Shown: in pieces, positions 10,349-38,082 of the stretch
How positions within the stretch are numbered: position 1 is the stretch's first letter
Layout: each line of letters begins with the position of its first letter
Assembly (NCBI GenBank): GCA_002269645.1
Contig: NIVC01003800.1
Coordinates: 1 to 40,196, forward strand
From: Macrostomum lignano
Lineage: Eukaryota
Length of the DNA: 40,196 nucleotides
Reading direction: 5' to 3'
The notes under the pieces: model-generated
Told to the model about the DNA's origin: nothing
Database searches by the model: none
The model's input: the letters and a program-made list of their open reading frames with translations, nothing else
Position numbers and translations under genes: made by a program

Positions 10349-10567
10349 TGAATCACTCATGAACCGAATCACTCATGAACTGAATCACTCATGAACTGAA
10401 TCACTCATGAACTGAATCACTCATGAACTGAATTACTCATGAACTGAATTACTCATGAACTGAATTACTCATGAACTGAATCACTCATGAACTGAATCAC
10501 TCATGAACTGAATCACTCATGAACCGAATCACTCATGAACTGAATCACTCATGTTCAATCACTCATG
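10349..10567. repeat. 16-bp minisatellite (TGAATCACTCATGAAC)n, about 13 copies
   Basis: Unit visible directly. Lies in the probable 5'-UTR intron of the calmodulin-like gene. Confidence 0.95.
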
Positions 10568-17600: not shown

Positions 17601-18458
17601 GGACTCAGGTGAACAATTAGTGAACAAATTGGAGTACTCTGTTTTGGAATCAGGGCCGTCATTAGTAATGCGTCACAATTACCATTGGCATGCAGTGGCC
17701 GTAAGCATCTGGTCAGAAATTCGATGATAGCACTGGTGTAGATGATAATACCGTAAGTATATCTATGGCCCTGACCTAAAGCCTGACGTGCTAAGAGGCA
17801 AGGAGAGAAAATATATAGAATCAACTTGGCTCGCCATCAGAGCCAGCCCAACATTGAAATAGATATAACAAGCACTACGTGATGCTACTGACAGTAAGTA
17901 GACAAGATAGCTCAACATTATCAAGAGTTAATAAAAGTTTGAAAATGCAATATAAAATCGTGAAAACGCTCACGCAGGGTGTACAGCCTCCCTAAATTTC
18001 TAAGAAACAGGCATGTACACTCTTTGTGCCTTGAGGGTTGGCCCTCATAGGTGTGAATCGTACGACAACCCTAACCCACCTTTTCGTGCACAAGCCGCAA
18101 AATTCAGTTCCAAATGAATTTGGCCTTGCACGGAATCGAACCAGGGTCAGTGGTGCGAAGGTCAGAGGTTGCACCACTGAGCTGCCTGCCCCCCCCACCT
18201 AGCGAATGTCGCTTACCAGCTGTCCTCCTTCTTCAGGCACTGCCCGGTGACCAGCAAGTGCTCCGGAGCCAGCCGGTGCTCCTCGGACATCGCAATGGAG
18301 CCGCTGTTTGCGCACAGGTCGGCCAGCAGAGTCGGCTGCGTTGCCGCACCGCTGGCAGGCAGCAGAATGTTGGCCCTCAGCGGGCTGGCAAACGGGATGC
18401 TCTGCTTGGATCCGGTGCCGGTCCTGGGCGACTCAGGCGATGTGGGTGACTGCGGCAT
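14699..18458 (-). CDS. BTB/POZ-domain protein with a divergent N-terminal (possibly MATH-like) region, 3 coding exons, about 355 aa
   Basis: Exons 18458-18217 (TG|GTAAGC, phase 2), 17043-16467 (CAACAG|G ... AAG|GTTTGT) and 14947-14699. The spliced product reads LELVVEDRKLYALPECLSCQSEYFRTKI...LFLSLLYP...MLAMADEFK|VPNLKATAERVL, a BTB signature. The start codon and last exon are less certain. Confidence 0.82.
15393..15700 (+). mobile_element. SINE family A, diverged subfamily copy
   Basis: A-box CAGCTCAGCGG, B-box GGTTCGATTCC, body CCATGAGGGCCACCCCCCAAGGCAC...ATGCCTGAC...GTCAGGGTCGTTGTACACCC. Confidence 0.85.
15703..16372. repeat. 11-bp minisatellite (CACCAAACTAT/CACCAAACTAC/CACCAAACTTT)n, about 60 copies
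   Basis: Unit visible directly. The 11-aa periodicity (3 x 11 nt) in ORF 15531..16490 agrees. Intronic. Confidence 0.96.
17048..17587. repeat. About 22-bp minisatellite (GGGGCTTATCAAGCTCAATTGT)n
   Basis: Near-perfect units at 17049-17150 that diverge rightwards. Abuts the BTB exon acceptor. Confidence 0.93.
17965..18197 (-). mobile_element. SINE family A, diverged copy with a different tRNA head
   Basis: Minus strand reads GGGGGCAGGCAGCTCAGTGG...GGTTCGATTCC...CCTATGAGGGCCAACCCTCAAGGCAC...GAGTGTACATGCC...GCTGTACACCCTG. Confidence 0.85.
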
Positions 18459-19196
18459 CGTCTCTGCTTGCTCAGGTCCTGCTGGCTTCAAAATTGGCTT
18501 TCAATTCTATTGCTTTCGACTCTGCCAAAATCTTTCTTGATCTCTCCCTCCCCTATTGTAGTTTTCTAAGCATTTGCGGCGGGGAGCGGGCGGGAGCGAG
18601 AGGAGAGAGAGGGACAGAGAAACGCCCCAATCCCCATTCCCCATGCTAGCGAGCAGTTGGCGCTGATCGATATATTATCGATTTCCCCCCAAGGCGATCA
18701 GCGATCTGGAGGGTAAGGGGGTGAAGGAAGACTACCGGCTGCTTGAGATCTGGCCCGGTAGCTGACAGACAGGATTTTCAGCTCAATAGTTCATTGGGAC
18801 TAAAGTAGTTGCTAGACCGCCAGTGCAGGGGAATGATAGAATTGGGAGCAATTGTCCCCGCACCTGCTGCAATACTTGCCAAATAGCTCTAAATTGCTTT
18901 TCTAAATCTCTCCACAAAAGTAGAAATCAACCAACAAATTTCAAGTTAGTAGAATGCTGCGCTTTTTTCTTGCGGTTATAAAGTAAAATTTTCACTTCAA
19001 ATGATTTTTGGGTCATTTATACGCCTATAGTATATGTCCATCTAATACACGTTATTATACTCTTGTGCATGAAATGTGGACGTCAAAGTAGTTTATAACA
19101 AACTATTTTAATATCTGTTATTAGTGTTACACGGCATGTCTTGATTTTAGAGGTCTTGTATTATCATTATAGTGATTGATTGACAAGCAGATATAA

Positions 19197-19858
19197 GATA
19201 TTTATTCCCCACTTGGCCCGGACCATAGACTACAGAAACCTATTTATTCCTCCACTTGGGTCCGGCCATAGACTACAGAAACCTATTTATTCCATGCTTG
19301 GGTCCGGCCATAGACTACAGAAACCTATTTATTCCATGCTTGGGTCCGGCCATAGACTACAGAAACCTATTTATTCCATGCTTGGGTCCGGCCATAGACT
19401 ACAGAAACCTATTTATTCCATGCTTGGGTCCGGCCATAGACTACAGAAACCTATTTATTCCATGCTTGGGTCCGGCCATAGACTACAGAAACCTATTTAT
19501 TCCATGCTTGGGTCCGGCCATAGACTACAGAAACCTATTTATTCCATGCTTGGGTCCGGCCATAGACTACAGAAACCTATTTATTCCATGCTTGGGTCCG
19601 GCCATAGACTACAGAAACCTATTTATTCCATGCTTGGGTCCGGCCATAGACTACAGAAACCTATTTATTCCATGCTTGGGTCCGGCCATAGACTACAGAA
19701 ACCTATTTATTCCATGCTTGGGTCCGGCCATAGACTACAGAAACCTATTTATTCCATGCTTGGGTCCGGCCATAGACTACAGAAACCTATTTATTCCATG
19801 CTTGGGTCCGGCCATAGACTACAGAAACCTATTTATTCCCCATTAGGGCCCGGCCATA
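19197..19858. repeat. 42-bp minisatellite (GGGTCCGGCCATAGACTACAGAAACCTATTTATTCCATGCTT)n
   Basis: 14 units from 19258 (13 identical), plus degenerate flanking units. Confidence 0.98.
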
Positions 19859-19945
19859 GGTTCAATTGCAGTTTTATTGCGCCATAGCTTTGCCCTCCCC
19901 ACAGTCTCGACAGCGGTACGCTTCATCGGACCGAAGTAAATAATT

Positions 19946-20008
19946 TCACAAGACTGAAGGACGCCTGCTCCTCTCCGAGTCCTCTGATGCGCCGGGACAT
20001 CTGGCCAC
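19946..20008 (+). mobile_element. Possible fragment of the CORE-SINE 3' tail
   Basis: GACTGAA...GATGCGCCG...CATCTGGCC occur in the same order as at 4768-4889. Confidence 0.35.
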
Positions 20009-21314
20009 CTTGATAGGCGAGTCAGACGTATTTTTATAGAATTTCCTATTTTTATTTGCTTAAAAATACTTAGTTACACGACTTAGAGTAGTCTAGTAGA
20101 GTTAATAACAAGCTTTGGTTTTTGGGTGCTCAGTCTTGGTTCTTGTCAATATTCAGGCTTTGCGCCACGGAGCAATAAAAAATGAGGTGTTTCAATAAAG
20201 TTGGCACTCAATAAGCAGCTTGTATTAAATAAATGCAAGTACGAGCGTACATTATTTCAAACCCATTCGGCTGCTGTACAATGGGACAGAAAATTATGTA
20301 CAAGCCTACTGAGCTGTAAGGGAATTCTTGAGCACTAGCTAGTAGTCCAGTTTAGAACCCCCACAAGTTTAGGATGAAGAAGAGCTTATCCACCAGAGGG
20401 ATCAGAATCCGGACCCGAGGGGGAAAGGCGGCAAAGCTTTATTCAGAGCCTCGGACTGAAGGCGATTCGGCTAAGTCTATCGGGAGTCCCCTGCGGCAGC
20501 GGGGCATGCAGTTTGTGCGCTACCGGGGTGGACGAGAAACTTGATTGATTTCTAATTAGGAGCCTTCGGGCTGATTTCTTGATCGCAGTTGAGCCAGGCG
20601 GCTTGAAAGCAGTTAGTCCGGAATTGCTCAGCTGTGCTCACGCAGAGGCGCCTCAGCATTGGGGAGGATATTCCCCCCCGCGGGAATGGTAGGAAAGAAT
20701 ATCCCAATTTGCTTCGGCTGACTGCCTTCCCTGCTCTGAGCGATTCGCTGCCAACTATGCATTCTCGGGTGAGTAGCTGAGGTGCACGCATTTTTTAAAT
20801 AGAAATCGAGGGTTTGCTGGCACCAATGAGCTCGCACTGTCAACTAGGAGTAGACAAATACGGCGCCTGCAAAGGTAGGGATTGGATCTGGACCCCCCAG
20901 CCCCCAACTGCCTACCACTCACCCAGCACATCAGCAAATAGTCCGCAGGAAGCAGGCTGTCTGCGCAGCTCAGCTAGGAAACGGATTTCTGCTCAATTTT
21001 TCGGCTGGACAGCCGCTCTGGAGGGTAGCAACAGGGTTTAGAGAGTTAGCTGCTGAGCTCTCTTCTCCTTGGCTGGGCAATAGTAGAAAACCTATGGCTC
21101 ACAATCCGTTTCCAATGCTCTCCAACCTCTCGTAGGAAAGCCGGTTGAAGAAGTGATTTTGGTTGTTCGGCCAATTGGATGGGGATTAGCCAACTTAGCG
21201 CATAGGCCACTCGAAGCCTTTAATAACTGGAGCTTCCTCTTCAACTATAGCGAGTGGAACTGAGCCCCCAGTCTTCCGCCAGAGCAGCATTAGAAAGCAA
21301 AAATAAGTTTGATT

Positions 21315-23601
21315 ATGCGAGTTTGGCTGTTCTGGCGGCGTTACCCGCTGTTTCGTCTTCTGCTTCTGGTCACCTCGCTTCTGTGGCTGACCCTGGTAGC
21401 TGCGCTGCTCAGTATCCACGCGGATCACGGCCTCAACGATGACACCGACTCCAGCGACCGAGTGCTGGCTGAAAAATCCCGCCTGAGCGCCGAGTTTAGG
21501 CGCAGCGACCGGGGGAAGCGGCTGCAGCGACTGCGCGAGCGTCAGGACCGGCTGCGCAGCATCCTCATGATGGAAGAAGCGACCAGCTCGACGGCAACGT
21601 CCGCCATGAAGACAAGCTTGACGGCGCCATCAACCGGTGCGCCGACATCAGCGGCCGGCGGTCCCGGCGACCTTGGCGCCCCGGTGTGGGTCGACCCGAG
21701 CCTGCTGAACGCCGACGAGCGCGACCGATTCGAGGCTGGCTGGCGCGACAGCGGCTTCAACGAGTTTGCCAGCGATCGAATTGGACCGCGACGTCGCCTG
21801 CAAGACTTTCGGCCGCTGGCCTGCCGCAAGAATAACTGGACAGCGGCCGGCCTGCCCAACACCAGCGTCATCGTCTGCGCGCACAACGAGGCCTGGTCGG
21901 CGCTGCTCAGGACGCTGCACTCCGTGCTGGACAGGTCGCCTCCGAACCTGCTGCACGAGGTCATCCTGGTGGACGACGCGTCAACTCGACCGCAGCTCGG
22001 CCGGCCTCTGGAGGATTACCTGGCTGAGCTGGGCCGGTCCGGTACGAGCGCTCGGCTTAGATTAATACGGAATTCCCGCCGCGAAGGGCTGGTCAGGTGA
22101 GAGGTGACAAGATGTACAGGTTCTCATTTACCAGTACACAGGCAGGCACTATAAGGTCAACTCTGGGTCTTAGATAGCAATCTGACACCGCTTTGTCATG
22201 ACGAGCATTTTCAATTTCAACTACCGCACAATAGGAATCCCAAACTCTGAATCTTTCAGGTCCCGCTTGGTTGGCGCCGCGGCCGCAACTGGCCAGACGC
22301 TCACTTTCCTGGACTCGCACGTCGAATGCGCCGAAGGCTGGCTGGAGCCCCTGCTGGACCGAGTGGCCCGCAGCCGACGAACGGTGGCCGTGCCCTACAT
22401 CGACGTGGTCAGCAGCGAGTCTCTGGCCTTCCTGCACGTGGCCCCGGAGCGAATGACGGTAGGCGGTTTCGACTGGCCGGGTCTGGCGTTCGCCTGGCGC
22501 CCGGTGCCAGACCGGGTACGGCGGAACCTCACAGGCCGCGCCGATCCAGTGCCGAGCGCCACTATGCCAGGCGGCCTCTTCACCATAGACCGGGCCTTCT
22601 TTGCTGAGCTCGGCGGCTATGACCCAGGGATGGAGATCTGGGGCAGCGAGAATCTCGAGCTCAGCTTCCGCGTGTGGATGTGCGGCGATCAAGGCCGAAT
22701 CGAGATTGTGCCCTGCTCGATCGTCGGCCACCTGTTTCGCTCCGTCAGCCCCTACACCTGGGGCAAAAGCGGCGCCGCCGAGGTGTTAAAGCGGAATGCC
22801 ATCCGACTGGCGGAAGTGTGGCTGGACGGCTTCAAGCATATCCTGTATCGCCAGTTCAACTATCGGCTGGGTGACTTCGGCGACGTCTCGCAGAGGCGGC
22901 AGCTCCGACGAAGGCTTGGCTGCCGCTCGTTCCGCTGGTACCTGGACACCGTCTGCCCGGAGCAGCTGGCGGCGCGGTGGTGGCGTCTGGAGGCCGATAA
23001 CGCCACCGCCGTTCGCATGGGGCCACTGCGCGTAGCTACGACACTCTCGGGCCGCATCTGGTGCCTCGACGCCGTGTTCTCCACCCTCGACGCGGAAGAG
23101 AAGGCGGCGACGCCTATGATTCGGGAATGCCACGGCGAAGGCGGCGGCCAGACTTGGGTGATCGCGGAAGCGGCAGCAGCCTCCGCCACCTCCGCTGATA
23201 GAGGCGGCAGGCCACTGGTTCTGGCGCGATCCGATGGTAGTTGTCTGCACTACAACAACCAACAGCTGTCGCTGGCGCCGTGTCAGGACACTGACAACGG
23301 TGAGGGTAGTCTGGCGAGGCTGCAAAGTTGGTGCTACGAGCCTCTGAAGCGCCGCCTAATCCATTCAGCCAGCGGGCGCTGCCTCGCCGTGCTTCACTCG
23401 GCCGCAGTGCCCGTGCCGCGGCTTGGCGTCATTGCCTGCCGCGACGGCGAGGGCGAGCAGGGCCAACGAAAGAGCGATGACGACTTCGGCTTAGCCTGGG
23501 AGCTGCCGGAGCCGCTCGACTTGTCCGATGACCGGCCCGTGGCGTCAGGCGCTTCAGTACCGCCTTTGTCAATCAGCGGCGACAAAGCAGCAGCGCATTA
23601 G
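21315..23601 (+). CDS. GALNT: Polypeptide N-acetylgalactosaminyltransferase (GT27) with ricin-B lectin domain, 2 exons, about 707 aa
   Basis: Exons 21315-22096 and 22260-23601 (163-nt phase-2 intron; junction REGLVR|SRLVGA). N-terminal TM helix, SVIVCAHNEAWSALLRTLHSV, ILVDDAS, DSH metal motif, YDPGMEIWGSENLELSFRVWMCG, VGHLFR, and lectin repeats (CLDA, CHGEGGGQTW). The specific paralog cannot be assigned. Confidence 0.96.
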
Positions 23602-24710: not shown

Positions 24711-25872
24711 TCAATTCTTCAGCAACAGAGTGCTGTAAATAGCGTTGATCACACCGTTTGGCTCATTAACTGGCACAGTGTACACCGGTCCGCCGTCAGA
24801 AAATACCAGCGTCTCCAAGACGCCACCACGAGAGGTAGCAGAGTCCGGGACGCGATACACAAACGGGTAGGTCAGAGCGAGTTCCTTGCAGTCGATTGAC
24901 ACCGATGTAACGTTTGGATAGCGCTCAAACTTGTGGGAATAGTGCAGGCTGATGCATGCGTTTGAAGGCTCGTACGAGTAGGATAGAAAGTTGAGCGCAT
25001 CTCTGGGTGAGTCGACCCAGCGGCCCATGAACGGCCTCTTATGCAGCGGGAAGGTCACCTTTTCTGGGTAGCGGCACTTCTTCCCAAAAGAGTCGTGCAA
25101 GTCATTAACCCAGCCACCCTCCAGCTCGTGGAATGACAGGTCAATGAAGGGCCAGCAGCCGTGTCTGGCCACGTTAAGACAATGTGACTTGCTGGACACT
25201 TTCCACCGACCAGCTTGCCTTAGGCGAAGGTCCGGGTGCCTGTTGATGTTGATGTTTTGTCTTTTTTGACTACCATTTTTAGGAACGTCTACTAAGGGTG
25301 CGAGGACTTGACTAACCAACCGTCTATGACAGGAACGCCTATAGTTGCACGCAATGTCGATAGACTCACCCCTTCAGAGCTTCAATAAGTCTGCGCTTGT
25401 CGGCCTCCCTCATCAGCATGTCCAGATCGTCATCCCATGGAATGACGCCATGATGCCGGTACGAGCCTAACAGTGTACCTCCGTACAGCATCACCTGGAT
25501 GTTGTGCTGTTTGCACAGGTCCAAAAACGCCCACAGCAGCTTGACAGTTGCTCGCAGTTCAGTCGCATTGATCTGCGGATCGAACAGATCACCTCGAGGC
25601 GGCGACCTTGCGCTCAGCATTCGAATGTAGAACTCAGAGGAAGGCAGCTGGGGCAGCTCAGCGGGCTGAGTGGTGCTCTCCGTGCTTTTCCCGCTGAAGC
25701 CTTGGTGCGTTATGGGACGTTTATTATCGCTAGCCGATTCCCATGGCAAACTTTTCTTTACCTGTGCGTTCAAGTAATCAAAATACAGCTTCGCAGTTAT
25801 TGTACTGAACGCTACTAACAGGAAATACCCTAAAATCCGCTGAGCAGTGCATCCAATCAGCAACCGAGGCAT
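24711..25872 (-). CDS. LicD/fukutin-family nucleotidyltransferase-fold type II membrane protein, 2 exons, about 343 aa
   Basis: Exons 25872-25370 and 25239-24711 (130-nt phase-2 intron GTGAGT...CAACAG; acceptor chosen by frame). Signature [22 protein letters not shown], later WPFIDL and FPLHKRPF, plus an N-terminal TM segment. Confidence 0.9.
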
Positions 25873-27048
25873 TTTAATGATGAAATCCACTTAGTAGAAA
25901 ACCGTTTGCGTGGCTCCGGTATGCAGTGTTCAGTGTAGCTCTTAGATCGCATGCATGAACTTCTGACTTTTCTTTTAGCCACTCGCTTGCTTGGAAGCTT
26001 CCGTTTATGTCGCTTCAGTGTGTGACGCACTATTCCAGTGTGTGATGGAACTGAGCGCAAATAAATGGCAACTGATGGATACATCAAATATTTCCCATTT
26101 ATACAAGTGTCTATGGCAAAAAAATATTGCCTTAGCACTGGTATAAATGGGGAATATATACCATTTACTTTGGCACATTTATTTTTAGAAAGTATGCTTT
26201 AGAAAGTAGAGCAGTACTCGTACGTATTTCTATGAAGTATGTACTGCTCTCTGAATTCCACACAGATAATTTGGAAGGAAAATTCGGTGTGTGTTGCTCA
26301 GTGCAGCGTTACTAGTAAAATATCAAGTTGATGAAATTGGAACACTTTGGGACATTGGGACACATCGCATGAGAATGCCGCTGTGTACTACATTTCAGGT
26401 GAGCTTAGTCGTAAACTTTTTTGCATGACTCGGCCGTTTCCTGTCCCGAGTCCCTGGGTGATGCAGTAAGCAAGTCCTAAAGAGCTTGCTGTTCAAATTC
26501 AATAACCCAATGTCCGATAAATATAATGGAGGTTAAACATGTGCCCAGCTCTTCCATACACACTCCGAGTGGTTTCGCACTACTATTGATCTGTCAGTGT
26601 GCAACAGTATTCGCATCCCATTATCCAATATGATTCGTTCCTGCCTACTTGTCAGTAGGAGCCCTCTTTAATCATTCCACAGGCAAATTAAAATTGTATT
26701 ATCTATACGAGCTCGGAGTTGAATAACAAGATTCTTGAGCTAAAATGTTATTTTACACACAATGAATGATGCGATCACGAAATTGCTTCTTTTACCAAGC
26801 CAAATCAAGAGGCTTGTAGCAGCAGTCAAAGACTGATTCTAGTCAGTAGAACGCAATGTAAACATTTGTGCCACTGTGCAATGCAGTGCCAGCTGTTAGC
26901 CAAAGGGCACCTAGCCGCAGGCTGCAATAAGCAAATTCAGTCATTTCTGCTGTCAAAGTTTCGCTGGCTATTTCCTCTGATGCCGATTGCGTGCCCATTT
27001 AATACACGATGAACCTGGACTTTGGCGCTGAGTTAGTCAGTCAAAGTT

Positions 27049-28641
27049 TTAAGCTTCAGCCTCTGCTACGTCGGCTTCCGCCTCTGCCTCTCCTATATCG
27101 CCGTCAGCCGCCTTCGACCACCGCCTGTGCAGCCGGTCGGAAACGCAGCAGCAGGCGATGTCGATCAGGGCGCCGACCGCCGCCGAGCACCGGGCCGCGA
27201 ACCTCTCGGTCGGCGCCAGCAGGTGCAGCTCGTCGGCTCGAATTGCCCCGGCCAGCAGGACGAGACGAAGGTCGGCCAGGCCGGCCGGCGCAGGAGACGA
27301 AGAGCCGGCCGAGACCAGTGCGCAGGCCGTGGCCACTGCAGCGATCGCCAGGAGCCGGTGCACGTCAGCGCCGAGCTTGGCCGCCAGGCTGCGCTGGCCC
27401 AGGAAGATGGCGCAGCCGGCCAGCCTGGAGGCGCCGGCGCCGGCGCTCAGCGAAGCGGCCAACGGCAGCAGAAAATCCGCGCCGCCGATGGCTGACGAGG
27501 CGCCGAGGGCGCGACAACAGCGCCGACTGGCGCCGATCGCTGCAGCGCCGGACCCCGTGGCGAAGGCGACTCCGGCAGCGGGCAGCGCCTCGGCCAGGCA
27601 GCGGACGGGGCTGGGCCGCCCGCCGGAAGCGGCAAGCAGCGGCGGCAGAGGCAGTGCGAGTCCCAGCAGCAGCAGCCAGGCCGCCAGCAGGCCGAGGCAC
27701 AGCGCCAGGCCGGGCACGCTGGCTCCAACGTCGGCCAGCGGCGGCGGCGGCGGCGCCTCCAGCGCGGCCTGGGCGGCCAGGCTGGCAAAGCCAAACGGCG
27801 CCAGGTGGCGCAGGCAGTGGTGGGCGCGCGCGACGGCACTCCGCAGAGCTCTTACCGTTTCGAATAGGTCGCCGTGGACGTCGCGATGCTTCAGCAGGGC
27901 TACGGCTGTCCTTGTGACGGCCAGCAGGCCCAGCAAGTTCGGACCGGGCGGGGCGAACACGGCAAAGTCAGCCGGATCGGCGCTGCTGGTTGCATTGCTG
28001 GCATTGGCCCAGCGGAGCTGCCAAGCGTGCAGCCTCAGGGGCCGCTTGCTCATGGCAGCCGCAGCCAAGCTGTCGGGGAACAGCAGACCGCCCAGGACGT
28101 CCAGAATAGCGGCCGCGGCGGCCAGGGTGTCACCTGAGGTGAACTCGCCGCCGCCTCCGCCGCTGCTGTCCTCGACTCTCAGCTGTCCAGGCCGAAGCCA
28201 CAGCATCAGCGACATAATGCCCCCGGTGGCCAGAATCCAGGCTGCCATCTGCATAGCAACCGTTGCTAAGACCAGCGCCGCGACGCTGCCAAGACTTAAT
28301 TCGAGCAGCGCAGCGGCAGCGGCAACCGTGGCCTGCGGCAGCACAGCGCAGCGGAGGAGGTCCGCCCAGGCCCGGCCGGGCCAGCCGAGCGCCCAGGCCA
28401 GCAGGCCGCCAGCGGCGACGTCTGCGCAGAGAATCCGCAGGCTGACGCCCAGCAGGAGGCCGGCCAGGCCGCCAGCCGTGCCAGCCAGCAGCGCCGGCAG
28501 CGGCGTCAGCCTCGGGCCGTCGTGCACGCGTCGCAGTGCGCGACTTTGCTGTCGACCTGGCCGATGACGCCCGGGGCGCCGGTTGGAAGCCTCGCCAACG
28601 GGGCTGAGGCCGATCTCCTCCGTGCTGTCCGGGCTGTGCAT
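27049..28641 (-). CDS. Intronless, highly divergent SLC1/DAACS (EAAT-like) transporter homolog, 530 aa
   Basis: Uninterrupted ORF (first ATG 28641). EAAT-type landmarks occur in order: WPGRAWADLLRCAVLP (TM2), LFPDSL, NLLGLL, LAPFGFASL, FATGSGAAA (HP1), FLLPLAASL....AIFLGQ (TM7), HP2 PAGL, and TM8 TERFAARCSAAVGALID. Confidence 0.82.
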   Translation of the reverse strand: MHSPDSTEEIGLSPVGEASNRRPGRHRPGRQQSRALRRVHDGPRLTPLPALLAGTAGGLAGLLLGVSLRILCADVAAGGLLAWALGWPGRAWADLLRCAVLPQATVAAAAALLELSLGSVAALVLATVAMQMAAWILATGGIMSLMLWLRPGQLRVEDSSGGGGGEFTSGDTLAAAAAILDVLGGLLFPDSLAAAAMSKRPLRLHAWQLRWANASNATSSADPADFAVFAPPGPNLLGLLAVTRTAVALLKHRDVHGDLFETVRALRSAVARAHHCLRHLAPFGFASLAAQAALEAPPPPPLADVGASVPGLALCLGLLAAWLLLLGLALPLPPLLAASGGRPSPVRCLAEALPAAGVAFATGSGAAAIGASRRCCRALGASSAIGGADFLLPLAASLSAGAGASRLAGCAIFLGQRSLAAKLGADVHRLLAIAAVATACALVSAGSSSPAPAGLADLRLVLLAGAIRADELHLLAPTERFAARCSAAVGALIDIACCCVSDRLHRRWSKAADGDIGEAEAEADVAEAEA

Positions 28642-28984
28642 GGCTGTCAGCCGGCTTGTCTGGGGCTCGCTGGCCTCATATAGTCGAGTGTTGCACACAG
28701 TCTGGTCAGCAGAATTTGAATTGCAGATTGCCAAAGCTGCTCTGTCAGAACAGGAGCGGCACTCACTGTGCGCTGAAGCTTACATTCGAGCTTCTGATTC
28801 GTTTCACCTGTTTGCGGCTTGAAAAGTAAATGAAGACAGGAGTTGCTGCGTTGGCTAATCATGGTTGAATAATTATCTAAAGTAACTAAATACGAGCGAA
28901 CTTAATGAAGACTGCGTTTCACAGCAGTATTGATTGGTTCTTATAGATAATGAAAAAAATAGTGACAGTATTTATGCCCGAACA

Positions 28985-29701
<717 letters not shown>

Positions 29702-30475
29702 CCATGACACACACACGCAGTACACATTAGCAATGAGAACATTAATTATCACCTTTGAAAGGATATGGACTCTGCTTAAAATAGATTTTATGAACTTTTG
29801 GATCAGCGCACTTGGTGTTCAATAGTATGTAAATATTAAATATCAGAGTTCCTCATAGATAAAATCAAATACGCAGTGGCCTCCGTTCTCTCCATGCTTC
29901 GAGCGGACATTTCCGATCATCCTCTCGCAGTCCATTCACTCTCCCCATCCCTCTGGTTCATTCTATTCGAATTTCCCTATTTCTTATCTTTCTTCTTGCA
30001 CAAGCAATTTCAAGAAACGCTCGCTCGCGTGCCAACCGAAAGCAGCTTGGAGCTCGCGTCTCTCCTATCCATTAATATTCATTAGCTTTTACTGGCCTGG
30101 CAGTAGCGTCTATAGGCCTCTGTGTAAGATTGGACTCGATAAAATCTGACACGAAAACTAGAGCGGCTAGCAGGTGGCTACCGTTGGGTGTCTGGCGGTA
30201 ACTTCACTCTGCACTCTGACAGGAGACACGAAGTCATAGAGACATGACATGTTTGTCGCAAAAGTAGGCGACCGTGACATCGTGACATTACAGGAGGAGT
30301 GCTGGATGCATTGATAGGACACAATCAGAAGACGCAGTCACAAGTACAATTTGATTAAATTTCTGCCTGCAATACATGCCTGCTTGCTTAGGATGAAGTG
30401 TCCGATATGGCTCTCAACTTTAATTTGATCGTGAGCATCAGTAACACTCCACTGCCCAAAGTCCTTCAGTGACTC

Positions 30476-31254
30476 TCCGCTACCCAATGTCCTTCAGATA
30501 GCTACCCTCCGCTACCCAATGTCCTTCGGATAGCTACCTTCCGCTACCCAATGTCCTTCAGATAGCTACCCTCCGCTACCCAATGTCCTTCAGATAGCTA
30601 CCTTCCGCTACCCAATGTCCTTCAGATAGCTACCCTCCGCTACCCAATGTCCTTCGGATAGCTACCCTCCACTACCCAATGTCCTTCGGATAGCTACCTT
30701 CCGCTACCAAATGTCCTCCAGATAGCTACCCTCCGCTACCCAATGTCCTTCGGATAGCTACCCTCCGCTACCCAATGTCCTCCAGATAGCTACCCTCCGC
30801 TACCCAATGTCCTTCGGATAGCTACCCTCCGCTACCCAATGTCCTTCGGATAGCTACCCTCCGCTACCCAGTGTCTTTCAGATAGCTACCCTCCGCTACC
30901 CAGTGTCCTTCAGATAGCTACCCTCCACTACCCAATGTCCTTCGGATAGCTACCCTCCGCTACCCAGTGTCTTTCAGATAGCTACCCTCCACTACCCAAT
31001 GTCCTTCGGATAGCTACCCTCCGCTACCCAGTGTCTTTCAGATAGCTACCCTCCACTACCCAATGTCCTTCGGATAGCTACCCTCCGCTACCCAGTGTCT
31101 TTCAGATAGCTACCCTCCACTACCCAATGTCCTTCGGATAGCTACCCTCCGCTACCCAGTGTCTTTCAGATAGCTACCCTCCGCTACCCAATGTCCTCCA
31201 GATAGCTACCCTCCGCTACCCAATGTCCTCCAGATAGCTACCCTCCGCTACCCC
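30476..31254. repeat. 32-bp minisatellite (CTCCGCTACCCAATGTCCTTCAGATAGCTACC)n, about 24 copies
   Basis: Unit visible directly. Alternating 64-bp dimers occur in the distal half. Confidence 0.97.
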
Positions 31255-33434
31255 TCAATCTCAGCAAGCAGAGCACAACCGAACTCTTTCAACAGTCGCA
31301 GCAGTCATTGCATCAGGAAACGAGAGCTTGGCAATGCTGGATAGCATGCATGGTACTCTTATTTTCTTTGCGTAATAAATCAAGCCAGCTCACTAGCTTT
31401 GGCATCTGCTCGGCCATTGTTGAGGCCTGTATTGCTGCTAATAAATATTCCCGCCCACTGAAACTGTCCAACGCCAAGACAGGGACAGAGCAAATAAATT
31501 TCCTGCAGCTAACTGGCATAGACAGGCAGGATAAGGCAAGAATGAGCAATTGCTTGCGTAGAGGAGACCTGAGGAGGCTTGCGCAGCACTTTCTCTTTTG
31601 CTATAGCCTTTTCCAATTAACTCTTTATCTCTATCATGAATTATTGACTAGATACTGGCTCATTTTCTTTCTGGTATTCTGTGCAACTGGTTAATCTTTT
31701 ATTACTGACTAATCCATAGTGGGCCATTTTCGTTGTCACTGGTCATCATCTGATGGGCGGGATTTCTAGGGCTTCTTTGTGCGATAAATTCTGCGGCTTC
31801 TTCAAGTCAAAGAGAAATGGAGATTTCTAAGAAACGATTTGCTTGGAAAGAGAGAAATTTATGGATAAAGACTGCTGAGATAAGAAGATGATTGACTTTA
31901 CCTGCGTTATCAATTGAGCAATAGCTATCTTGATAGTTAGCTACTCATAGTAGTCGATTCAAGGACCACCTGGAAGCTGGACGGGAATACACATGGACAA
32001 CCGCAGTAAAGGGCCGCTACACTCGACTGTCTTAGAAATGATCTGATCAATTCTAAACCAAAGCTTTAAACAGTTGTTTTGAAATGCAATGCTTTGCATA
32101 CCGGTACTTAGCTTAAAGAAACCATGGGCTTTTGAACATTAAAATATTATAAGGGTTGTTTGAAATTCGGAAGTCTTTTACATTATTGATTTTTACGAGC
32201 TATACTTCAAACTGCTTTCATAACAGTAAGCCCGGCAGGGACCCCTGAGGAAAGTAGATGGACGGGTATTTTGTTTCCTGGAAAATAATTTTTGAAGATT
32301 AAAACAAACCTTATAATTATTTTTTTAACTTTTACTGGTAAATCATCTAAATGAATGTGAAAATTACATTTTCCCTTTATTACTTTAGCTCAACTTATCT
32401 ATACACAGACGAATATGTACTTTACTTTAGCGTATATGCTCATTTTATTTTAAATCAGAACCTGATTTCATTGCCAAAATCCATCGAATTCTCCAATTAG
32501 CAGAACAATTTCCCCAACCAGTTTGGCATGCATGCAGTTTCTGCCCGCAGGCTGAAGTATACATTATAATGCTAGGCATTTTTCCACACGACTGACCACT
32601 AAACCGCTTAACCGCTAAAGGCTTCGTAAATAAGCAACCGTACTGACAGACATTTGCTAATGTTTATTTATGAAAGGCCACATACGCTCGTAGTAATGCT
32701 TAGCCTGCCTGGATTAATTTTTACATGGCCAGCCTAGCCTATGATGGGTGTGAATCACGCTGTTTTCAAACTTAATAATGATATTAGTAATAATAATATT
32801 ATTATTAGTTAATTACAACTAGAGAAAGAGAAGAAGAAAATGAAAATCAATCAAGCAAAGTCGATCCCCAAGGCTCAAGGGAAGCCGGCTAGCGGCTCAG
32901 TTGGCATATGCAGTTGCTTGCCATAATGCGCCAGCATACGTGCGTACGCCATTCGCCATTCGAATGCGCCAGTAGGCAGGGGGGGGGCTCCGTGAGTTAT
33001 TGGTGGTCACGGCTGGCTGACCCCCGGCCTATACTGAACCTATATAGAAAGTACTTTCTGGTGCCTGACTTGCTGCTGGCCGGGCCTTTTGCCGCTACGC
33101 GAAGTGGCCTCTGAAGTCAAGATGGGAAAAGAAAGAAACAGAGCGAGAGAGATGAGCTGGCAACAGATTCCCCGCTGTCAGCGAATGACTGATTAGCCTT
33201 CCCCTATTCTGTGCGGCGTGTTAGCTGTCCGCCCTGGCAGCGGGCGGCCGTCCGTCACTGGCCTGTCAGGTGGCTTCTGATGCGTCAGCGCCGGCTTCGA
33301 GTCAGATGGAAGATTATTTTAGAGGCGGAAGGTTAGGGGCTTTTCAATTTTACCGACAGGATTAGATTGGATTGGGGCTGGGGAGGCCCGGACTCTCATG
33401 GGCTGTCATGGGTAGCTGTTGGATTTTGGCGCAA

Positions 33435-34130
33435 GACAGGAAGGGACAGACACTAAGACAGGAAGGGACAGACACTAAGACAATAAGGGACAGACACTAA
33501 GACAGGAAGGGACAGACACTAAGAAAGGAAGGGATAGACACTAAGACAGGAAGGGACAGACACTAAGACAGGAAGGGACAGACACTAAGACAGGAAGGGA
33601 CAGACACTAAGACAGGAAGGGACAGACACTAAGACAGGAAGGGACAGACACTAAGACAGGAAGGGACAGACACTAAGACAGGAAGGAACAAACACTAAGA
33701 CAGGAAGGGACAGACACTAAGACAGGAAGGGACAGACACTAAGACAGGAAGGGACAGACACTAAGACAGGAAGGGACAGACACTAAGACAGGAAGGGACA
33801 GACACTAAGACAGGAAGGGACAGACACTAAGACAGGAAGGAACAAACACTAAGACAGGAAGGGACAGACACTAAGACAGGAAGGGACAGACACTAAGACG
33901 GGAAGGGACAGACACTAAGACAGGAAGGGACAGACACTAAGACAGGAAGGGACAGACACTAAGACAGGAAGGGACAGACACTAAGACAGGAAGGGACAGA
34001 CACTAAGACAGGAAGGGACAGACACTAAGACAGGAAGGGACAGACACTAAGACAGGAAGGGACAGACACTAAGACAGGAAGGGACAGACACTAAGACAGG
34101 AAGGGACAGACACTAAGACAGGAAGGGACA
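33435..34130. repeat. 22-bp minisatellite (GACAGGAAGGGACAGACACTAA)n, about 31 copies
   Basis: Unit visible directly; highly homogeneous. Confidence 0.98.
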
Positions 34131-34685
34131 GTTGCCAAGGCGGATAGAAATATATAAAAAATTAGCTTGTAGAAGTTGAATCAGCCTAGACAGGAAATTG
34201 AGAGAAAAGTTAACACCATAGCATTTTCTTAGTCTGGATTAAGTTTGGAAAGCAAAATCTCTGAGATTATCTCTGACAGAAGACGAGAGCTGCTAAATAC
34301 TAAAAATCTCTTTTTTGGCCTAACTTGAAGTTTTTCTGCCAAAGCAGCTGAGTGCTGACGGTAGTAGCTGCCAACGTTTTGATTCACTCATATCAAAAGT
34401 GCAAATTATAAGCAATAAATAAGGCTTACACCAACGAAATCTTGCATGATATTTTTAGTGTTAGATCAGTTAAACAATTAATGGTTTATAAACAGCTTTG
34501 GTAGATTTTCCTCAAGCTATAGACATGGAAATTATAGTACAGTTGACTAGGATAATCTTGTCTGGCAAACTGTGTTATGCAGATAAACTGGCCGGAGTGA
34601 CCTCGTCTATGTGAACAGGCAGGCCGCCTAAAGAGGCGGCGGAATGGGTCAAGAATCTGCGGCTGGGCCCCGAGATATGACTCCT

Positions 34686-36077
34686 CTAGACCCAGGACAG
34701 CTGCAGTTGCTCGCCCTCCAACTCGATTGAAGTCTGCGTCGGATGCGGTGGCGGCTGCAGAAGCAGCGGCGGCTTCTCCTCGGATTTCGACAGCACCGAT
34801 GCTCCGTTCTTCTCAGCATCGACCGCGTCGTCGCCGGCCTCGGCTTCGGCCGGCGCTGCAGATGAAAAGCCGCGCACCGACCGACGCAGGCGTCGACGCT
34901 GCTCCGACGTGCGTCGGGACGGCAGCTGCACCGAGGCGATGAAGGCGTCGTCTCTGCCGGCTCGGTCTTGACCGCCGCCGACGCTGGCAGCCGCGGCGAC
35001 CCCGAGTCGCCGGGTGCACAGCAGCCTGGCCAGCTCCCTGCGAAACAGGGCGCCGGTGGCCAGGTAGACAAAGAATTTCAGCGCATTGTGACTGACGGCC
35101 AGGCTGTTAACTATGTGACTAGCGGCCAGGTGAGTGAAATAGGTGCGCAGCTGGGGCAGCTGGCCGTCATCGATTTGCTGGCGCACCTGGGCGTCGGTGA
35201 GGTTGCAGGTGAGGCCCTCCAAGTCGGTGCTGACCAGGCTGATGCTGGCAAACAGCAGGGCGGTGACCGGCAGCATGGCGCCGATCTGGTAGAAGGAGAC
35301 ACTCAGCAGCGTCACCGTGGCTGCCGTCGGTTGTCGCCGCTGCGCCGACGTTGGCATGGGCGCAGACAGCTCGGACACGGTGGCCACCGCTCCGCTAGCC
35401 GCTGACCGCCTCACCTGCACCAGCACCAGCAGGTTGAAGGCCAAAATAGTCAGCGGTGCTGCGGCGAAGAACAGCACTTCCGTGATCTTCGTCCAAACGT
35501 TGTAGAACCTGTGCTGCATCGTGCCAGCCTCCAGAATCCGTTTGTCCTCTGTGCAGATCTGAACGCTAGCGTCGTAGTGATAGAAGCGGAGCTGCATCAG
35601 CGCCACCAGAAGGCAGCCGACAGACAGGCAGGCGGTGGCCGCCAGAGCCCGGCGGACGGTGCAGAGCCGGTGGCTGCTGAACGGATGGCAGATGCCGATG
35701 TAGCGCTCAACAGTGAAGCCGAGAATCAGAGCCGGGGACAGGTACTGCATCCAGATGCTGTAGACAGGGAAGGCCCAGCAGACGGGCCGGTTGTCGAGCA
35801 CTCTAACGTCATAGTACTCTCGCAGATGCCAGGGCAGCTGCTGCATCAGCAGGAATGCCGCATCCAGTACAGCCAAGGCGCACAGGTAGATGCTGGAGCT
35901 GCTGCGCATCTGGCGACTGCTCCAGACGGCCAGGCTGAGGAGGCTGCCTGGAACGCCAAGCACCAGCCAAAGCGGCAGCAGAGTGCGGGCGAGGTGCACA
36001 CTATAGGGCACGAATGCCAGGCTGAGGCTGAGACTGCTGCTGTGCCGGCTCAGAATGCCAGCGCAACTGTCGTTCAT
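34686..36077 (-). CDS. Intronless class A (rhodopsin-like) GPCR, FMRFamide/peptide-receptor-like orphan, 463 aa
   Basis: Seven hydrophobic segments. TM2 YLCALAVLD, TM3 Cys and FTVERYIGICHPF, an ECL2 Cys, and TM7-H8 ALKFFVYLATGALFRREL. Confidence 0.93.
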   Translation of the reverse strand: MNDSCAGILSRHSSSLSLSLAFVPYSVHLARTLLPLWLVLGVPGSLLSLAVWSSRQMRSSSSIYLCALAVLDAAFLLMQQLPWHLREYYDVRVLDNRPVCWAFPVYSIWMQYLSPALILGFTVERYIGICHPFSSHRLCTVRRALAATACLSVGCLLVALMQLRFYHYDASVQICTEDKRILEAGTMQHRFYNVWTKITEVLFFAAAPLTILAFNLLVLVQVRRSAASGAVATVSELSAPMPTSAQRRQPTAATVTLLSVSFYQIGAMLPVTALLFASISLVSTDLEGLTCNLTDAQVRQQIDDGQLPQLRTYFTHLAASHIVNSLAVSHNALKFFVYLATGALFRRELARLLCTRRLGVAAAASVGGGQDRAGRDDAFIASVQLPSRRTSEQRRRLRRSVRGFSSAAPAEAEAGDDAVDAEKNGASVLSKSEEKPPLLLQPPPHPTQTSIELEGEQLQLSWV

Positions 36078-36287: not shown

Positions 36288-36644
<357 letters not shown>

Positions 36645-37228: not shown

Positions 37229-38082
37229 CTGTGTGTCAGCATGCCTACCTATCTACCTGCCTACCTACCTATCTACCTGCCTACCTATCTACCTGCCTAC
37301 CTATCTACCTGCCTACCTATCTACCTGCCTACCTATCTACCTACCTACCTATCTACCAACCTAGCTATCTACCAACCTACCCATCTATCTACCTACCTAC
37401 CTATCTACCTATCTACCTATCTACCAACCTACCCATCTATCTACCTACCTACCTATCTACCTACCTACCTATCTACCTATCTACCTATCTACCTGCCTAC
37501 CTATCTACCTGCCTACCTATCTACCTATCTACCTATCTACCAACCTACCTATCTACCTACCTACCTATCTATCTACCTATCTACCTATCTACCAACCTAG
37601 CTATCTACCAACCTAGCTATCTACCAACCTAGCTATCTACCAACCTACCTATCTAACTACCTACCTATCTATCTACCTACCTATCTACCTACCTATCTAC
37701 CTACCTACCTATCTATCTACCTACCTATCTACCAACCTAGCTATCTACCAACCTACCCATCTATCTACCTACCTATCTACCTATCTACCTATCTACCAAC
37801 CTACCCATCTATCTACCTACCTACCTATCTACCTACCTACCTATCTACCTATCTACCTATCTACCTGCCTACCTATCTACCTGCCTACCTATCTACCAAC
37901 CTACCTATCTACCTGCCTACCTATCTACCTGCCTACCTATCTACCTATCTACCTATCTACCAACCTAGCTATCTACCAACCTACCTATCTACCTACCTAC
38001 CTATCTATCTACCTACCTATCTACCTATCTATCTACCTACCTACCAATCTACCAACCTACCTATCTACCTACCTGTCTACCA
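37229..38082. repeat. Compound (CTAC/CTAT/CTGC/CAAC)n tetranucleotide array
   Basis: Visible directly. A long internal duplication is apparent between about 37360-37510 and about 37737-37890. Confidence 0.97.

What the first reader, a model, noticed from the sequence alone, without database searches (positions are those of the whole stretch)
27049..28641. Intact SLC1/EAAT homolog that has lost essentially all Na+ and substrate-binding residues (candidate pseudo-transporter)
The 530-codon ORF has no stops and keeps the EAAT helix order, but the functional motifs are replaced. TM7 NMDGT reads SAGAG (about 27433-27447). The HP1 serine-rich TSSSSATLP reads TGSGAAAIG. TM8 VDWLLDRFRTMVNVLGD reads TERFAARCSAAVGALID (about 27162-27212), so the GltPh-equivalent D394, R397, T398 and N401 appear as A, S, A and G while D405 is kept. 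These residues are established as essential for Na+-coupled acidic or neutral amino-acid transport. A conserved scaffold without them suggests another role, such as an uncoupled anion channel, a regulatory subunit in hetero-trimers, or a sensor. The alignment was done by eye.
Basis: partly seen in the sequence, partly recalled or inferred. Interest (0 to 1): 0.72.

Follow-up and report, generated by a model that had tools for sequence, protein, structure and literature searches.

The report
Flatworm glutamate-transporter homolog without binding sites
A flatworm (Macrostomum lignano) gene-like open reading frame clearly has the fold of a glutamate/amino-acid transporter, but almost every residue that normally binds sodium and the amino acid has been replaced by alanine, glycine or serine, so it is either a re-purposed "dead" transporter or a gene copy on its way out.

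Summary
Window 27049-28641 (-) is one uninterrupted 530-codon exon. It matches Pfam SDF/SLC1 over its full length (E 4e-17) and scores 105 bits against a profile of 13 relatives (best of 500 shuffles: 1.9 bits). An AlphaFold model matches ASCT2/EAAT3/EAAT1 (target TM-score 0.74-0.83). The TM3 Thr-Thr pair of the Na3 site is Ala-Trp. None of 55 relatives has lost all of these.

A neighbouring gene is 100% identical to a Macrostomum lignano protein, so the host is that flatworm. The ORF is an orphan. Its best match among 1.84 billion representative proteins is 26% identical, and it is absent from the annotated proteomes.

It most likely is, or recently was, a maintained coding exon. The frame is unbroken, codon usage matches its neighbours, and its GC richness is confined to the exon in 42% GC surroundings. 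Two of its four Asn form glycosylation sequons in the correct extracellular loop. It cannot be a Na+-coupled amino-acid carrier. Its actual role and its expression were not tested, and a young pseudogene is not excluded.

The parts
27049..28641 (-). Single-exon 530-codon ORF (ATG 28641-28639, TAA 27051-27049) encoding a full-length SLC1/SDF-fold protein. GC is 72% (GC1 0.76, GC2 0.60, GC3 0.80).
28237..28242 (-). TM3 positions equivalent to GltPh T92/S93 (Na3 site). They read A134-W135 where the family has Thr-Thr (89% and 80%).
   Evidence: residue roles from PMC12668577
27988..28005 (-). Two N-glycosylation sequons, N213-A-S and N216-A-T, in the extracellular TM4b-c loop. They use 2 of the protein's only 4 Asn. 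28 of 55 relatives have a sequon in the same loop.
   Evidence: shuffle P = 1.9e-4
27532..27558 (-). HP1 tip, residues 362-370: TGSGAAAIG in place of the serine-rich TxSSxATLP. T362 and S364 are kept; S365->G, T368->A, P370->G.
27433..27447 (-). TM7 unwound-loop motif, residues 399-403: SAGAG in place of NM(D/N)GT. GltPh equivalents: N310->S, M311->A, D312->G, G313->A, T314->G.
27271..27309 (-). HP2 tip, residues 445-457: AGSSSPAPAGLAD in place of (A/S)AGIPxAGLVT. It has a 3-residue insertion, and the conserved Pro column reads A451.
27160..27210 (-). TM8, residues 478-494: TERFAARCSAAVGALID in place of xDWxLDRxRTxxNVxGD. GltPh equivalents: D394->A483, R397->S486, T398->A487, N401->G490; D405 is kept as D494.
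26998..27003 (-). ATTAAA hexamer 46 nt downstream of the stop codon, a possible polyadenylation signal. Read from the sequence only, not tested.
   Evidence: sequence reading

Best explanation
The ORF is a lineage-specific, very fast-evolving paralog of the animal EAAT/ASCT (SLC1) family in the flatworm Macrostomum lignano. It is, or was until very recently, a maintained protein-coding exon. Its product keeps the SLC1 architecture: TM1-8, HP1 and HP2, the helix-breaking Pro/Gly positions, and an extracellular TM4 loop with N-glycosylation sites. The pocket that binds three Na+ and the amino acid has been emptied to Ala/Gly/Ser, so the protein cannot perform Na+-coupled amino-acid transport.

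Shown: homology, fold, motif loss and exon-like sequence properties.

Inferred: the binding-site constraint was lost after duplication. The force that keeps exons GC-rich in this genome then pushed the freed positions toward GC-rich codons (Ala, Gly, Arg, Pro). The frame, membrane-compatible helices and glycosylation sites stayed under selection.

Guessed: the product is a transport-dead SLC1 protomer. It would act either through its scaffold, for example by trimerising with itself or with canonical paralogs, or as an ungated leak or facilitator for something other than amino acids.
For: Homology and fold:
- Pfam SDF full length, E 4e-17.
- 105 bits against a relatives-only profile, versus at most 1.9 bits for 500 shuffles.
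- AlphaFold pTM 0.59, with TM helices at pLDDT 70-86.
- Foldseek top hits are ASCT2, EAAT3 and EAAT1, E 2e-12, target TM-score 0.74-0.83.

Motif loss:
- Placed identically by three alignments.
- Unique among 55 relatives, which all keep xM(D/N)G and D..RT..N..GD. The two partial exceptions are P0144 and P0164.
- Residue roles are as defined in PMC12668577.

Maintained coding exon:
- The whole match lies in one frame, with no frameshift or stop despite about 75-80% amino-acid divergence.
- Synonymous codon usage correlates r = 0.93 with the neighbouring GalNAc-T and GPCR genes, and GC3 is 0.80 against 0.76-0.80.
- GC richness starts and stops at the ORF ends. Introns and intergenic DNA of the window are 39-53% GC. 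Neutral decay here should therefore lower GC, whereas this ORF is the most GC-rich piece of the window.
- With unbiased substitution, a sequence of this composition stays stop-free in only 0.2% of simulations at 0.27 substitutions per site.
- Only 4 Asn remain. One is the nearly invariant N235, and two form sequons in the homologous extracellular loop (P = 1.9e-4).
- All 3 conserved Phe and 7 of 10 conserved Pro are kept.
- Among clearly derived residues in columns the family never charges, Ala outnumbers Pro 33 to 3 and Arg 33 to 5. Charged residues are 7 of 94 there against 12 of 69 elsewhere.
Against: - No expression evidence could be obtained.
- The ORF is absent from the 15-billion-protein collection, and no relative above 26% identity exists among 1.84 billion representatives. 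The adjacent GalNAc-T is present at 100% identity as a UniRef M. lignano protein. The GenBank annotation of this species was transcript-based (PMC5730564). The ORF may therefore be unexpressed.
- No ortholog or homeolog was found, so dN/dS could not be estimated.
- The composition is extreme: 22% Ala, 46% GARP, no Tyr. Divergence is uniform across segments. Both look like relaxed constraint.
- Tests for continuing selection on hydrophobicity are only marginal once inherited residues are set aside. The derived-only charge test gives p = 0.08, and the alignment-free test of charge-free runs gives P = 0.02-0.10.
- Under strongly GC-biased fixation, an open frame survives 2-10% of the time by substitutions alone.
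- A single exon is unusual for this genome, where the mean is 4.9 introns per gene. It could mark a retrocopy.
Confidence: 0.55

Rival explanations
1. It is an unexpressed, recently inactivated or never-functional duplicate or retrocopy, that is, a young pseudogene. Its frame is still open only because stop codons are rare at 72% GC. The motif losses are simply decay.
For: - Missing from annotated M. lignano protein sets, although the neighbour is present.
- Single exon in a genome averaging 4.9 introns per gene.
- Extreme Ala/Gly/Arg/Pro enrichment, with raised GC1 and GC2 relative to neighbours.
- The antisense strand is open for 504 codons.
- It stays stop-free in 2-10% of GC-biased simulations.
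- Selection tests on derived residues are only marginal.
- M. lignano carries large recent duplications (PMC5730564).
Against: - Losing 33 of 65 conserved residues neutrally needs about 0.27 substitutions per site. No frameshift accompanies this, and the whole match is in one frame.
- Non-coding DNA at this locus is 39-45% GC. Neutral decay should lower GC3, yet GC3 is 0.80, equal to the intact neighbours, with sharp edges at the start and stop codons.
- Codon usage correlates r = 0.93 with the neighbours.
- Two of four Asn sit in sequons in the correct loop.
- Pro and Arg are rare among derived residues in membrane columns.
- No poly(A) tract or closer parental paralog was seen.
Confidence: 0.3
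2. It is still an active carrier or channel with a changed specificity. The enlarged, apolar Ala/Gly-lined pocket might carry a neutral or hydrophobic solute without ion coupling. Alternatively the protein might conduct anions constitutively through the scaffold/transport-domain interface. This is a sub-case of the best explanation, stated separately because it predicts measurable flux.
For: - The SLC1 fold and both hairpins are retained.
- D494 (GltPh D405), T362 and S364 are kept.
- Uncoupled SLC1 proteins are physically possible. Reconstructed ancestors bind aspartate without Na+ (PMC12668577; PDB 9bh0 and 9bgy among the structural hits).
Against: - The uncoupled ancestors keep the NMD loop and D394/R397/N401 unchanged, whereas here all are gone.
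- HP2 carries an insertion and has lost its conserved Pro.
- No characterised SLC1 member lacks these residues, to my knowledge and among the 55 relatives examined.
- The TM2 Ser that is 87% conserved in the relatives reads Ala here (A107). From my own recollection, this TM2 Ser affects anion selectivity in EAATs; that role was not checked here.
Confidence: 0.12
3. The match is a compositional or alignment artefact, and intact NMDG and TM8 motifs lie elsewhere in the sequence or in another frame.
For: The sequence is low-complexity-like (22% Ala). Word-based searches were swamped by it.
Against: - Shuffles score at most 1.9 bits against 105 bits for the ORF.
- Three alignments and a structure model agree.
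- The protein has only 4 Asn, 6 Met and no Tyr, so no NMDG-like motif can exist anywhere in it.
- No other frame or locus in the window matches the family.
Confidence: 0.01

Closest known systems
Animal EAAT/ASCT transporters (SLC1A1-7; Pfam PF00375 SDF). Nearest sequences are protostome 'amino acid transporter' proteins from Pomphorhynchus laevis, Plakobranchus ocellatus, Romanomermis culicivorax, Chironomus riparius and Mesorhabditis belari.
   Same: Same fold and the same order of TM1-8, HP1 and HP2. It has the eukaryote-type TM4b-c extracellular loop with N-glycosylation sequons. Conserved Pro/Gly/Phe landmarks are kept: FPG, LP, PG, FPxxL, GxNxLG, PxG, NP->SP, AFxT, FxLP and IFxxQ.
   Different: Identity is only 19-26%. 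It lacks the NMDG loop, the TM3 Thr pair, most of the HP1 Ser run, and the TM8 D/R/T/N residues that coordinate Na+ and substrate. It is a single exon with 46% Gly/Ala/Arg/Pro.
GltPh / GltTk, the archaeal Na+-coupled aspartate transporters used as the structural reference
   Same: Overall fold (Foldseek target TM-score 0.67-0.70). The D405 equivalent is kept (D494).
   Different: Equivalents of T92/S93, N310, M311, D312, T314, D394, R397, T398 and N401 are A, W, S, A, G, G, A, S, A and G (roles from PMC12668577).
H+-coupled and reconstructed uncoupled SLC1 homologs (GltP-type; AncInt of PMC12668577; PDB 9bgy, 9bgz, 9bh0)
   Same: These are precedents for SLC1 proteins that do not use Na+. The ORF has an aliphatic residue (Ala) at the position-92 equivalent, as H+-coupled members do.
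   Different: H+-coupled members are defined by L311 and N405, while the ORF has A and D. Uncoupled ancestors keep the NMD loop and the substrate-binding D394/R397/N401 intact, and the ORF keeps none of them.
Partly degenerate invertebrate SLC1 paralogs found among the hits: P0164 (Sinanodonta woodiana, KAL3846709.1) and P0144 (Oedothorax gibbosus, KAG8195426.1)
   Same: Animal SLC1 paralogs with eroded motifs. P0164 reads TM7 SCNGG and TM8 ...DRIRSTSSVVSH. P0144 reads HMNGG and MEWLMERFRT..NVVAD.
   Different: Both still keep most of the TM8 D..R(T/S) core and the HP1 Ser/Thr run. They keep 39 or more of the 65 conserved columns, against 32 for the ORF. They are not close relatives of the ORF, at about 20% identity.
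Transporter-like sensors or 'transceptors' and pseudo-transporters of other families (yeast Ssy1, Snf3/Rgt2) - from my own knowledge, as an analogy only
   Same: The concept is the same: a transporter fold retained after loss of transport, and used for another role.
   Different: They belong to different folds and families. Their function is demonstrated experimentally, whereas nothing is demonstrated here.

Membership tests
SLC1 / Sodium:dicarboxylate symporter superfamily (Pfam PF00375), by fold and homology | Significant full-length match to the family profile, above the curated threshold | tested here: met
   62.6 bits against a gathering score of 27.9, E 4.4e-17, profile positions 10-386 of 387. 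105 bits against a relatives-only profile, with shuffles at most 1.9 bits.
SLC1 / Sodium:dicarboxylate symporter superfamily (Pfam PF00375), by fold and homology | Eight TM helices plus two re-entrant hairpins, in the elevator-type fold | tested here: met
   AlphaFold model with pTM 0.59 and helices in the expected order. Foldseek top 50 hits are all SLC1 structures, target TM-score up to 0.83. Model confidence is moderate (mean pLDDT 63).
Na+-coupled SLC1 transporters (EAAT, ASCT, GltPh type) | Na+-site residues [S/T]92-93, N310, [M/S]311, [D/E]312 and [D/E]405 in GltPh numbering (definition from PMC12668577) | tested here: not met
   The ORF has A134, W135, S399, A400, G401 and D494. Only the last fits.
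Na+-coupled SLC1 transporters (EAAT, ASCT, GltPh type) | Substrate-coordinating T314, D394, R397 (or the ASCT-type equivalent) and N401, plus the HP1 Ser motif | tested here: not met
   G403, A483, S486 and G490. HP1 reads TGSGAAAIG, with only T362 and S364 kept.
H+-coupled SLC1 transporters (GltP type) | Signature [A/L/I/V/M/F]92, L311 and N405 (PMC12668577) | tested here: not met
   A134 fits, but the 311 equivalent is Ala and the 405 equivalent is Asp. The substrate residues are also missing.
Functional, expressed protein-coding gene | Transcript evidence, and purifying selection (dN/dS below 1) against orthologs | not testable with these tools
   No M. lignano reads or sister-species genomes could be reached. 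There was no exact or close match in the protein collection, on contigs or in metagenomes. Only indirect evidence is available.
Processed retrocopy / pseudogene | Frame disruptions, a poly(A) remnant or target-site duplications, and a closer parental paralog | tested here: not met
   No stop or frameshift. No A-tract was seen in the roughly 450 nt read downstream of the stop. The nearest relative of any species is 26% identical. Intronless status is compatible with a retrocopy but not diagnostic. Target-site duplications were not searched for specifically.
SLC1 homotrimer or heterotrimer | Trimerisation through TM2, TM4 and TM5 | not tested
   Scaffold segments keep relatively more family-level identity (ratio 0.67-0.70) than TM7 and TM8 (0.44-0.47). 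No multimer modelling or experiment was done.

The most novel reading that the evidence does not exclude
M. lignano expresses a glycosylated SLC1-fold membrane protein that has lost ion and amino-acid binding completely and has acquired a non-transport role. It might be a dominant modulatory protomer in trimers with canonical EAATs, a constitutive anion or solute leak, or a receptor or scaffold. It would be the first natural 'pseudo-transporter' of the glutamate-transporter family. It would also be a natural test of which parts of the elevator fold are needed for folding and assembly rather than for transport.
Probability: 0.3. Interest if true: 0.7.

Novelty: new variant of a known kind. Interest (0 to 1): 0.45.

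Why it matters
SLC1 transporters are among the best-understood elevator-type carriers, and their Na+ and substrate sites are close to invariant from archaea to humans. In the 55 relatives examined here, none lacked them all.

A naturally selected family member with an emptied pocket would show what the fold can do without transport, such as assembly, leak conductance or signalling. It would be a ready-made negative control for structure-function work. It would also illustrate how exon-specific GC pressure can remodel a membrane protein toward Ala/Gly once functional constraint is lifted.

If it turns out to be an unexpressed relic, the finding is ordinary. It would be a decaying duplicate in a genome known for massive recent duplication.

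Tried and rejected
- Word-indexed protein searches. With the ORF alone, none of 8000 candidates scored. With the ORF plus a 13-relative alignment, only P0191 was returned. The Ala/Leu-rich words swamped the candidate list, so the exhaustive HMMER search was used instead.
- Exact-sequence look-ups of the ORF, the neighbouring GPCR ORF and P0001 on contigs or in clusters found nothing. No second M. lignano copy or ortholog could be fetched, and no dN/dS was possible.
- A scan of metagenome contigs for relatives gave 277 pattern matches, none confirmed.
- The bacterial promoter and terminator scan is irrelevant for a eukaryotic locus and was disregarded.
- The idea that the antisense ORFs 27158-28567 and 27009-27917 (+) are the real gene was rejected. 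They have no Pfam match and are Arg/Ala/Ser/Pro-rich, as is typical opposite a GC-rich coding strand.
- The idea of other SLC1 fragments or frame-shifted pieces in the window was rejected.
- The large charge-exclusion signal (7 of 258 against 42 of 150, p = 7e-14) was first taken as strong proof of selection. It shrank to p = 0.08 when restricted to clearly derived residues, and to P = 0.02-0.10 in an alignment-free version. I treat it as supportive only.
- Literature searches for an SLC1 pseudo-transporter, or for this gene, returned nothing relevant.
Full report
**What is at the coordinates.** Window 27049-28641 on the minus strand is one uninterrupted reading frame of 530 codons, from ATG to TAA. 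It is 72% GC (GC1 0.76, GC2 0.60, GC3 0.80). The GC content changes within about 100 bp at both ends, from 68-78% inside to 42-50% outside. The protein is 22% Ala, 17% Leu and 10% Gly. It has only 4 Asn, 4 Lys and 6 Met, and no Tyr.

**Which organism.**
- The neighbouring ORF 22198-23601 (+) is 100% identical to a UniRef polypeptide N-acetylgalactosaminyltransferase of Macrostomum lignano (P0001).
- P0001 maps onto the window as four exons (18295-18441, 18694-18756, 21312-22097, 22258-23598) with GT-AG introns.
- The window is therefore free-living flatworm DNA. It is full of micro- and minisatellites, as described for this genome (PMC5730564).
- Other genes in the window are a LicD-domain gene (24711-25890, -) and an intronless rhodopsin-type GPCR ORF (34686-36077, -).

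**Is the homology real?** Yes.
- Pfam SDF (PF00375) matches residues 59-503 over profile positions 10-386 of 387. The score is 62.6 bits, E 4.4e-17, against a curated cut-off of 27.9.
- The best solved-structure sequences are EAAT1cryst (E 1e-10), then EAAT2, EAAT3 and ASCT2.
- Because the composition is extreme, I built a profile from 13 relatives without the ORF. The ORF scores 105.3 bits (E 7e-32). The best of 500 shuffles scores 1.9 bits, and the reversed sequence -2.9.
- A six-frame search of the whole window finds this one locus, in one frame, as one domain.
- An AlphaFold2 model built on the 14-sequence alignment has mean pLDDT 62.9 and pTM 0.59, with membrane helices at 70-86. Its 50 best Foldseek matches in the PDB are all SLC1 structures. 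ASCT2, EAAT3 and EAAT1 come first, at E 2e-12 and target-normalised TM-score 0.74-0.83.

The HMMER pairwise alignment, MAFFT with 13 relatives and MAFFT L-INS-i with 55 relatives agree on the following.

| Element | ORF residues | ORF reads | Family reads |
|---|---|---|---|
| HP1 | 362-370 | TGSGAAAIG | TxSSxATLP |
| TM8 | 478-494 (nt 27160-27210) | TERFAARCSAAVGALID | xDWxLDRxRTxxNVxGD |

- The residue roles come from PMC12668577. The Na+ sites are [S/T]92-93, N310, [M/S]311, [D/E]312 and [D/E]405. The substrate is held by T314, D394, R397 and N401.
- In those terms the ORF has A, W, S, A, G and D at the Na+ sites, and G, A, S and G at the substrate site. Only the D405 equivalent (D494) survives.
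- The TM7b Tyr that stacks on R397 is R406. The HP2 Pro is A451, and the HP2 tip has a 3-residue insertion.
- Of 65 columns at least 80% conserved among 55 relatives, the ORF keeps 32. The family median is 60 and the minimum 39. It keeps 28 of 43 non-polar columns but only 5 of 22 polar ones (Thr 1/9, Asn 0/3, Asp 1/3, Arg 0/1).
- Every one of the 55 relatives keeps an xM(D/N)G-type loop and the TM8 D..RT..N..GD core. They range from green algae and sponges to fish. Two are partly eroded: P0164 from a mussel and P0144 from a spider.
- The protein has only four Asn, so an NMDG-like motif cannot be hiding elsewhere.

**How isolated is it?**
- An exhaustive HMMER search of 1.84 billion representative proteins gave 67 hits. 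The best was E 2.4e-10 at 26% identity, and none was better than 1e-10.
- The named hits are EAAT/ASCT-type 'amino acid transporters' of very different animals, plus a green alga. The ORF therefore sits on a long branch, roughly equidistant from all of them.
- The ORF is not in the 15-billion-protein collection, and no gene with this product is on record. Its neighbour GalNAc-T is there.
- The GenBank annotation of M. lignano was built from transcripts (PMC5730564). Its absence is therefore a mild sign of low or no expression.

**Gene or relic? Points for a relic.**
- At 72% GC, stops are rare, and the antisense strand is open for 504 codons.
- In simulations of substitutions only, the frame stays open in 2-10% of runs at 0.27 substitutions per site if G/C-to-A/T changes are fixed 3-7 times less often.
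- GC1 and GC2 are well above those of the neighbours (0.76/0.60 against about 0.65/0.50). The amino-acid sequence itself has therefore slid toward GC-rich codons.
- Divergence is high in every segment.
- The gene has no intron, in a genome that averages 4.9 per gene.
- The striking exclusion of charged residues from columns the family never charges (7 of 258 against 42 of 150, p = 7e-14) mostly reflects inherited residues. It falls to 7 of 94 against 12 of 69 (p = 0.08) for clearly derived residues. An alignment-free version gives P = 0.02-0.10.

**Gene or relic? Points for a maintained exon.**
- Losing half of the conserved residues neutrally needs about 0.27 substitutions per site, or roughly 430 events. 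Yet no frameshift is present, and the family match runs in one frame from TM1 to TM8. Indels normally accompany substitutions at a rate of several per cent (general knowledge).
- Non-coding DNA here is AT-rich: introns 43-53% GC, intergenic 39-45%. Exons are 60-72% GC. Neutral decay should therefore lower GC. Instead, GC3 (0.80) equals that of the intact neighbours (0.76-0.80), and the GC step coincides with the start and stop codons.
- With unbiased substitution, the open frame survives in only 0.2% of simulations.
- Synonymous codon choice correlates r = 0.93 with the neighbouring genes.
- Of the four remaining Asn, one is the nearly invariant N235 of the GxNxLG landmark. Two form N-x-S/T sequons (N213-A-S, N216-A-T) in the extracellular TM4b-c loop, where 28 of 55 relatives also carry sequons. 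The shuffle probability is 1.9e-4.
- All three conserved Phe (AT-rich codons) and 7 of 10 conserved Pro are kept.
- Among derived residues in membrane columns, Ala (33) vastly outnumbers Pro (3) and Arg (5), which have equally GC-rich codons. This is what selection for helices in a bilayer would produce.

**Weighing.** I weigh this as about 0.55-0.6 for a coding exon that is, or was until very recently, maintained, and about 0.3 for a young, unexpressed relic. Even under the relic reading, most of the motif loss seems to have happened while the sequence was still treated as an exon.

**How it most likely works.**
- Shown: this is an SLC1-fold protein whose ion and substrate pocket is lined by Ala, Gly and Ser.
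- Following from established knowledge of the family: it cannot bind Na1 and Na3 normally, cannot form the Na+-induced high-affinity site, and cannot hold the alpha-amino and carboxylate groups of an amino acid. It is not a Na+-coupled (or H+-coupled) amino-acid or dicarboxylate carrier.
- Inferred: after duplication, constraint on the pocket was lifted. The exon-specific GC pressure of this genome then converted the freed polar positions to GC-rich codons. Most of the changes are A/T-to-G/C, for example N->S, D->G, T->A and S->G.
- Loss relative to the family is greatest in TM7, TM8 and TM3 (identity ratios 0.47, 0.44 and 0.52). It is least in the scaffold helices TM4 and TM5 (0.70 and 0.67).
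- Guessed: the product is a transport-dead protomer that acts through its scaffold, or an ungated leak or facilitator. No data here separate these roles.
- The reconstructed uncoupled SLC1 ancestors are not a true precedent, because their binding residues are intact.

**Comparison with what is known, and novelty.**
- By homology and fold it is a member of the SLC1/SDF superfamily.
- It fails the defining residue sets of both the Na+-coupled and the H+-coupled functional classes.
- I found no described SLC1 member with this degree of site loss, either in the relatives examined or in the literature searches. That is absence of evidence only.
- It is best called a new variant of a known kind.
- Interest is moderate. 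However, it rests on one lineage-specific, unannotated ORF in a heavily duplicated genome, with no expression or ortholog data.

Noticed in passing
window 18295-23598 (+): A four-exon polypeptide GalNAc-transferase gene (GT2 + Glyco_transf_7C + ricin B domains). It is 99-100% identical to UniRef M. lignano protein P0001 (775 aa), which identifies the organism. Intron 3 (22098-22257) has a GTGAGA donor and a TTTCAG acceptor. A paralog, P0002 (BOX15_Mlig008699g1), is 50% identical.
   Followed up: yes
window 34686-36077 (-): An intronless 463-codon rhodopsin-family GPCR ORF (Pfam 7tm_1, E 2e-15; GC3 0.80). Its exact sequence is not in the protein collection either, so absence from the collection is not specific to the SLC1 ORF.
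   Followed up: partly
window 24711-25890 (-): Two adjacent ORFs on the same strand as the SLC1 ORF. The upstream one ends in the first 47 positions of a LicD domain (E 7e-17), so this is probably a two-exon fukutin/LicD-type gene. Its GC is only 51-52%, lower than the other genes of the window.
   Followed up: no
window 28986-29701: An (AGAC)179 microsatellite that starts 345 bp upstream of the SLC1 ORF's ATG. It generates several spurious 150-250-codon ORFs (CLSV and TDRQ repeats) on both strands.
   Followed up: partly
window 498-1853, 10317-10553, 15699-16372, 17047-17585, 19199-19839, 30447-31253, 33433-34131, 36289-36644, 37244-38074: At least nine long mini- or microsatellite arrays with periods of 3-48 bp. 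The arrays at 498-1853 and 17047-17585 share a GGTTTATCAAG core. The 11-bp array at 15699-16372 produces a spurious 319-codon ORF with weak apolipophorin-like Pfam hits.
   Followed up: no
whole window; exon and intron table: GC richness is strictly exon-specific at this locus. Exons are 60-72% GC (GC3 0.76-0.80), introns 43-53% and intergenic DNA 39-45%, with steps at start and stop codons and at splice sites. The force behind this (codon selection, or something transcription- or conversion-linked) is not known to me. It matters for reading any 'intact ORF' in this genome.
   Followed up: partly
window 27158-28567 (+) and 27009-27917 (+): Long antisense ORFs of 469 and 302 codons lie opposite the SLC1 ORF. 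They are Arg/Ala/Ser/Pro-rich and have no Pfam match. They are a by-product of the GC-rich coding strand and could mislead gene finders.
   Followed up: yes
proteins P0164 (Sinanodonta woodiana KAL3846709.1) and P0144 (Oedothorax gibbosus KAG8195426.1): Two unrelated invertebrate SLC1 paralogs among the hits also have partly eroded TM7 and TM8 motifs (SCNGG with DRIRSTSSVVSH; HMNGG with MERFRT..NVVAD). Degenerate SLC1 paralogs may be more widespread in invertebrates than recognised.
   Followed up: partly
window 28742-28766 (-): A pyrimidine-rich ...CTCCTGTTCTGACAG|A acceptor-like site lies about 100 nt upstream of the ATG. It could be a spliced-leader or cis-splice acceptor. The frame is open upstream to 28779. 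Read from the sequence only.
   Followed up: no
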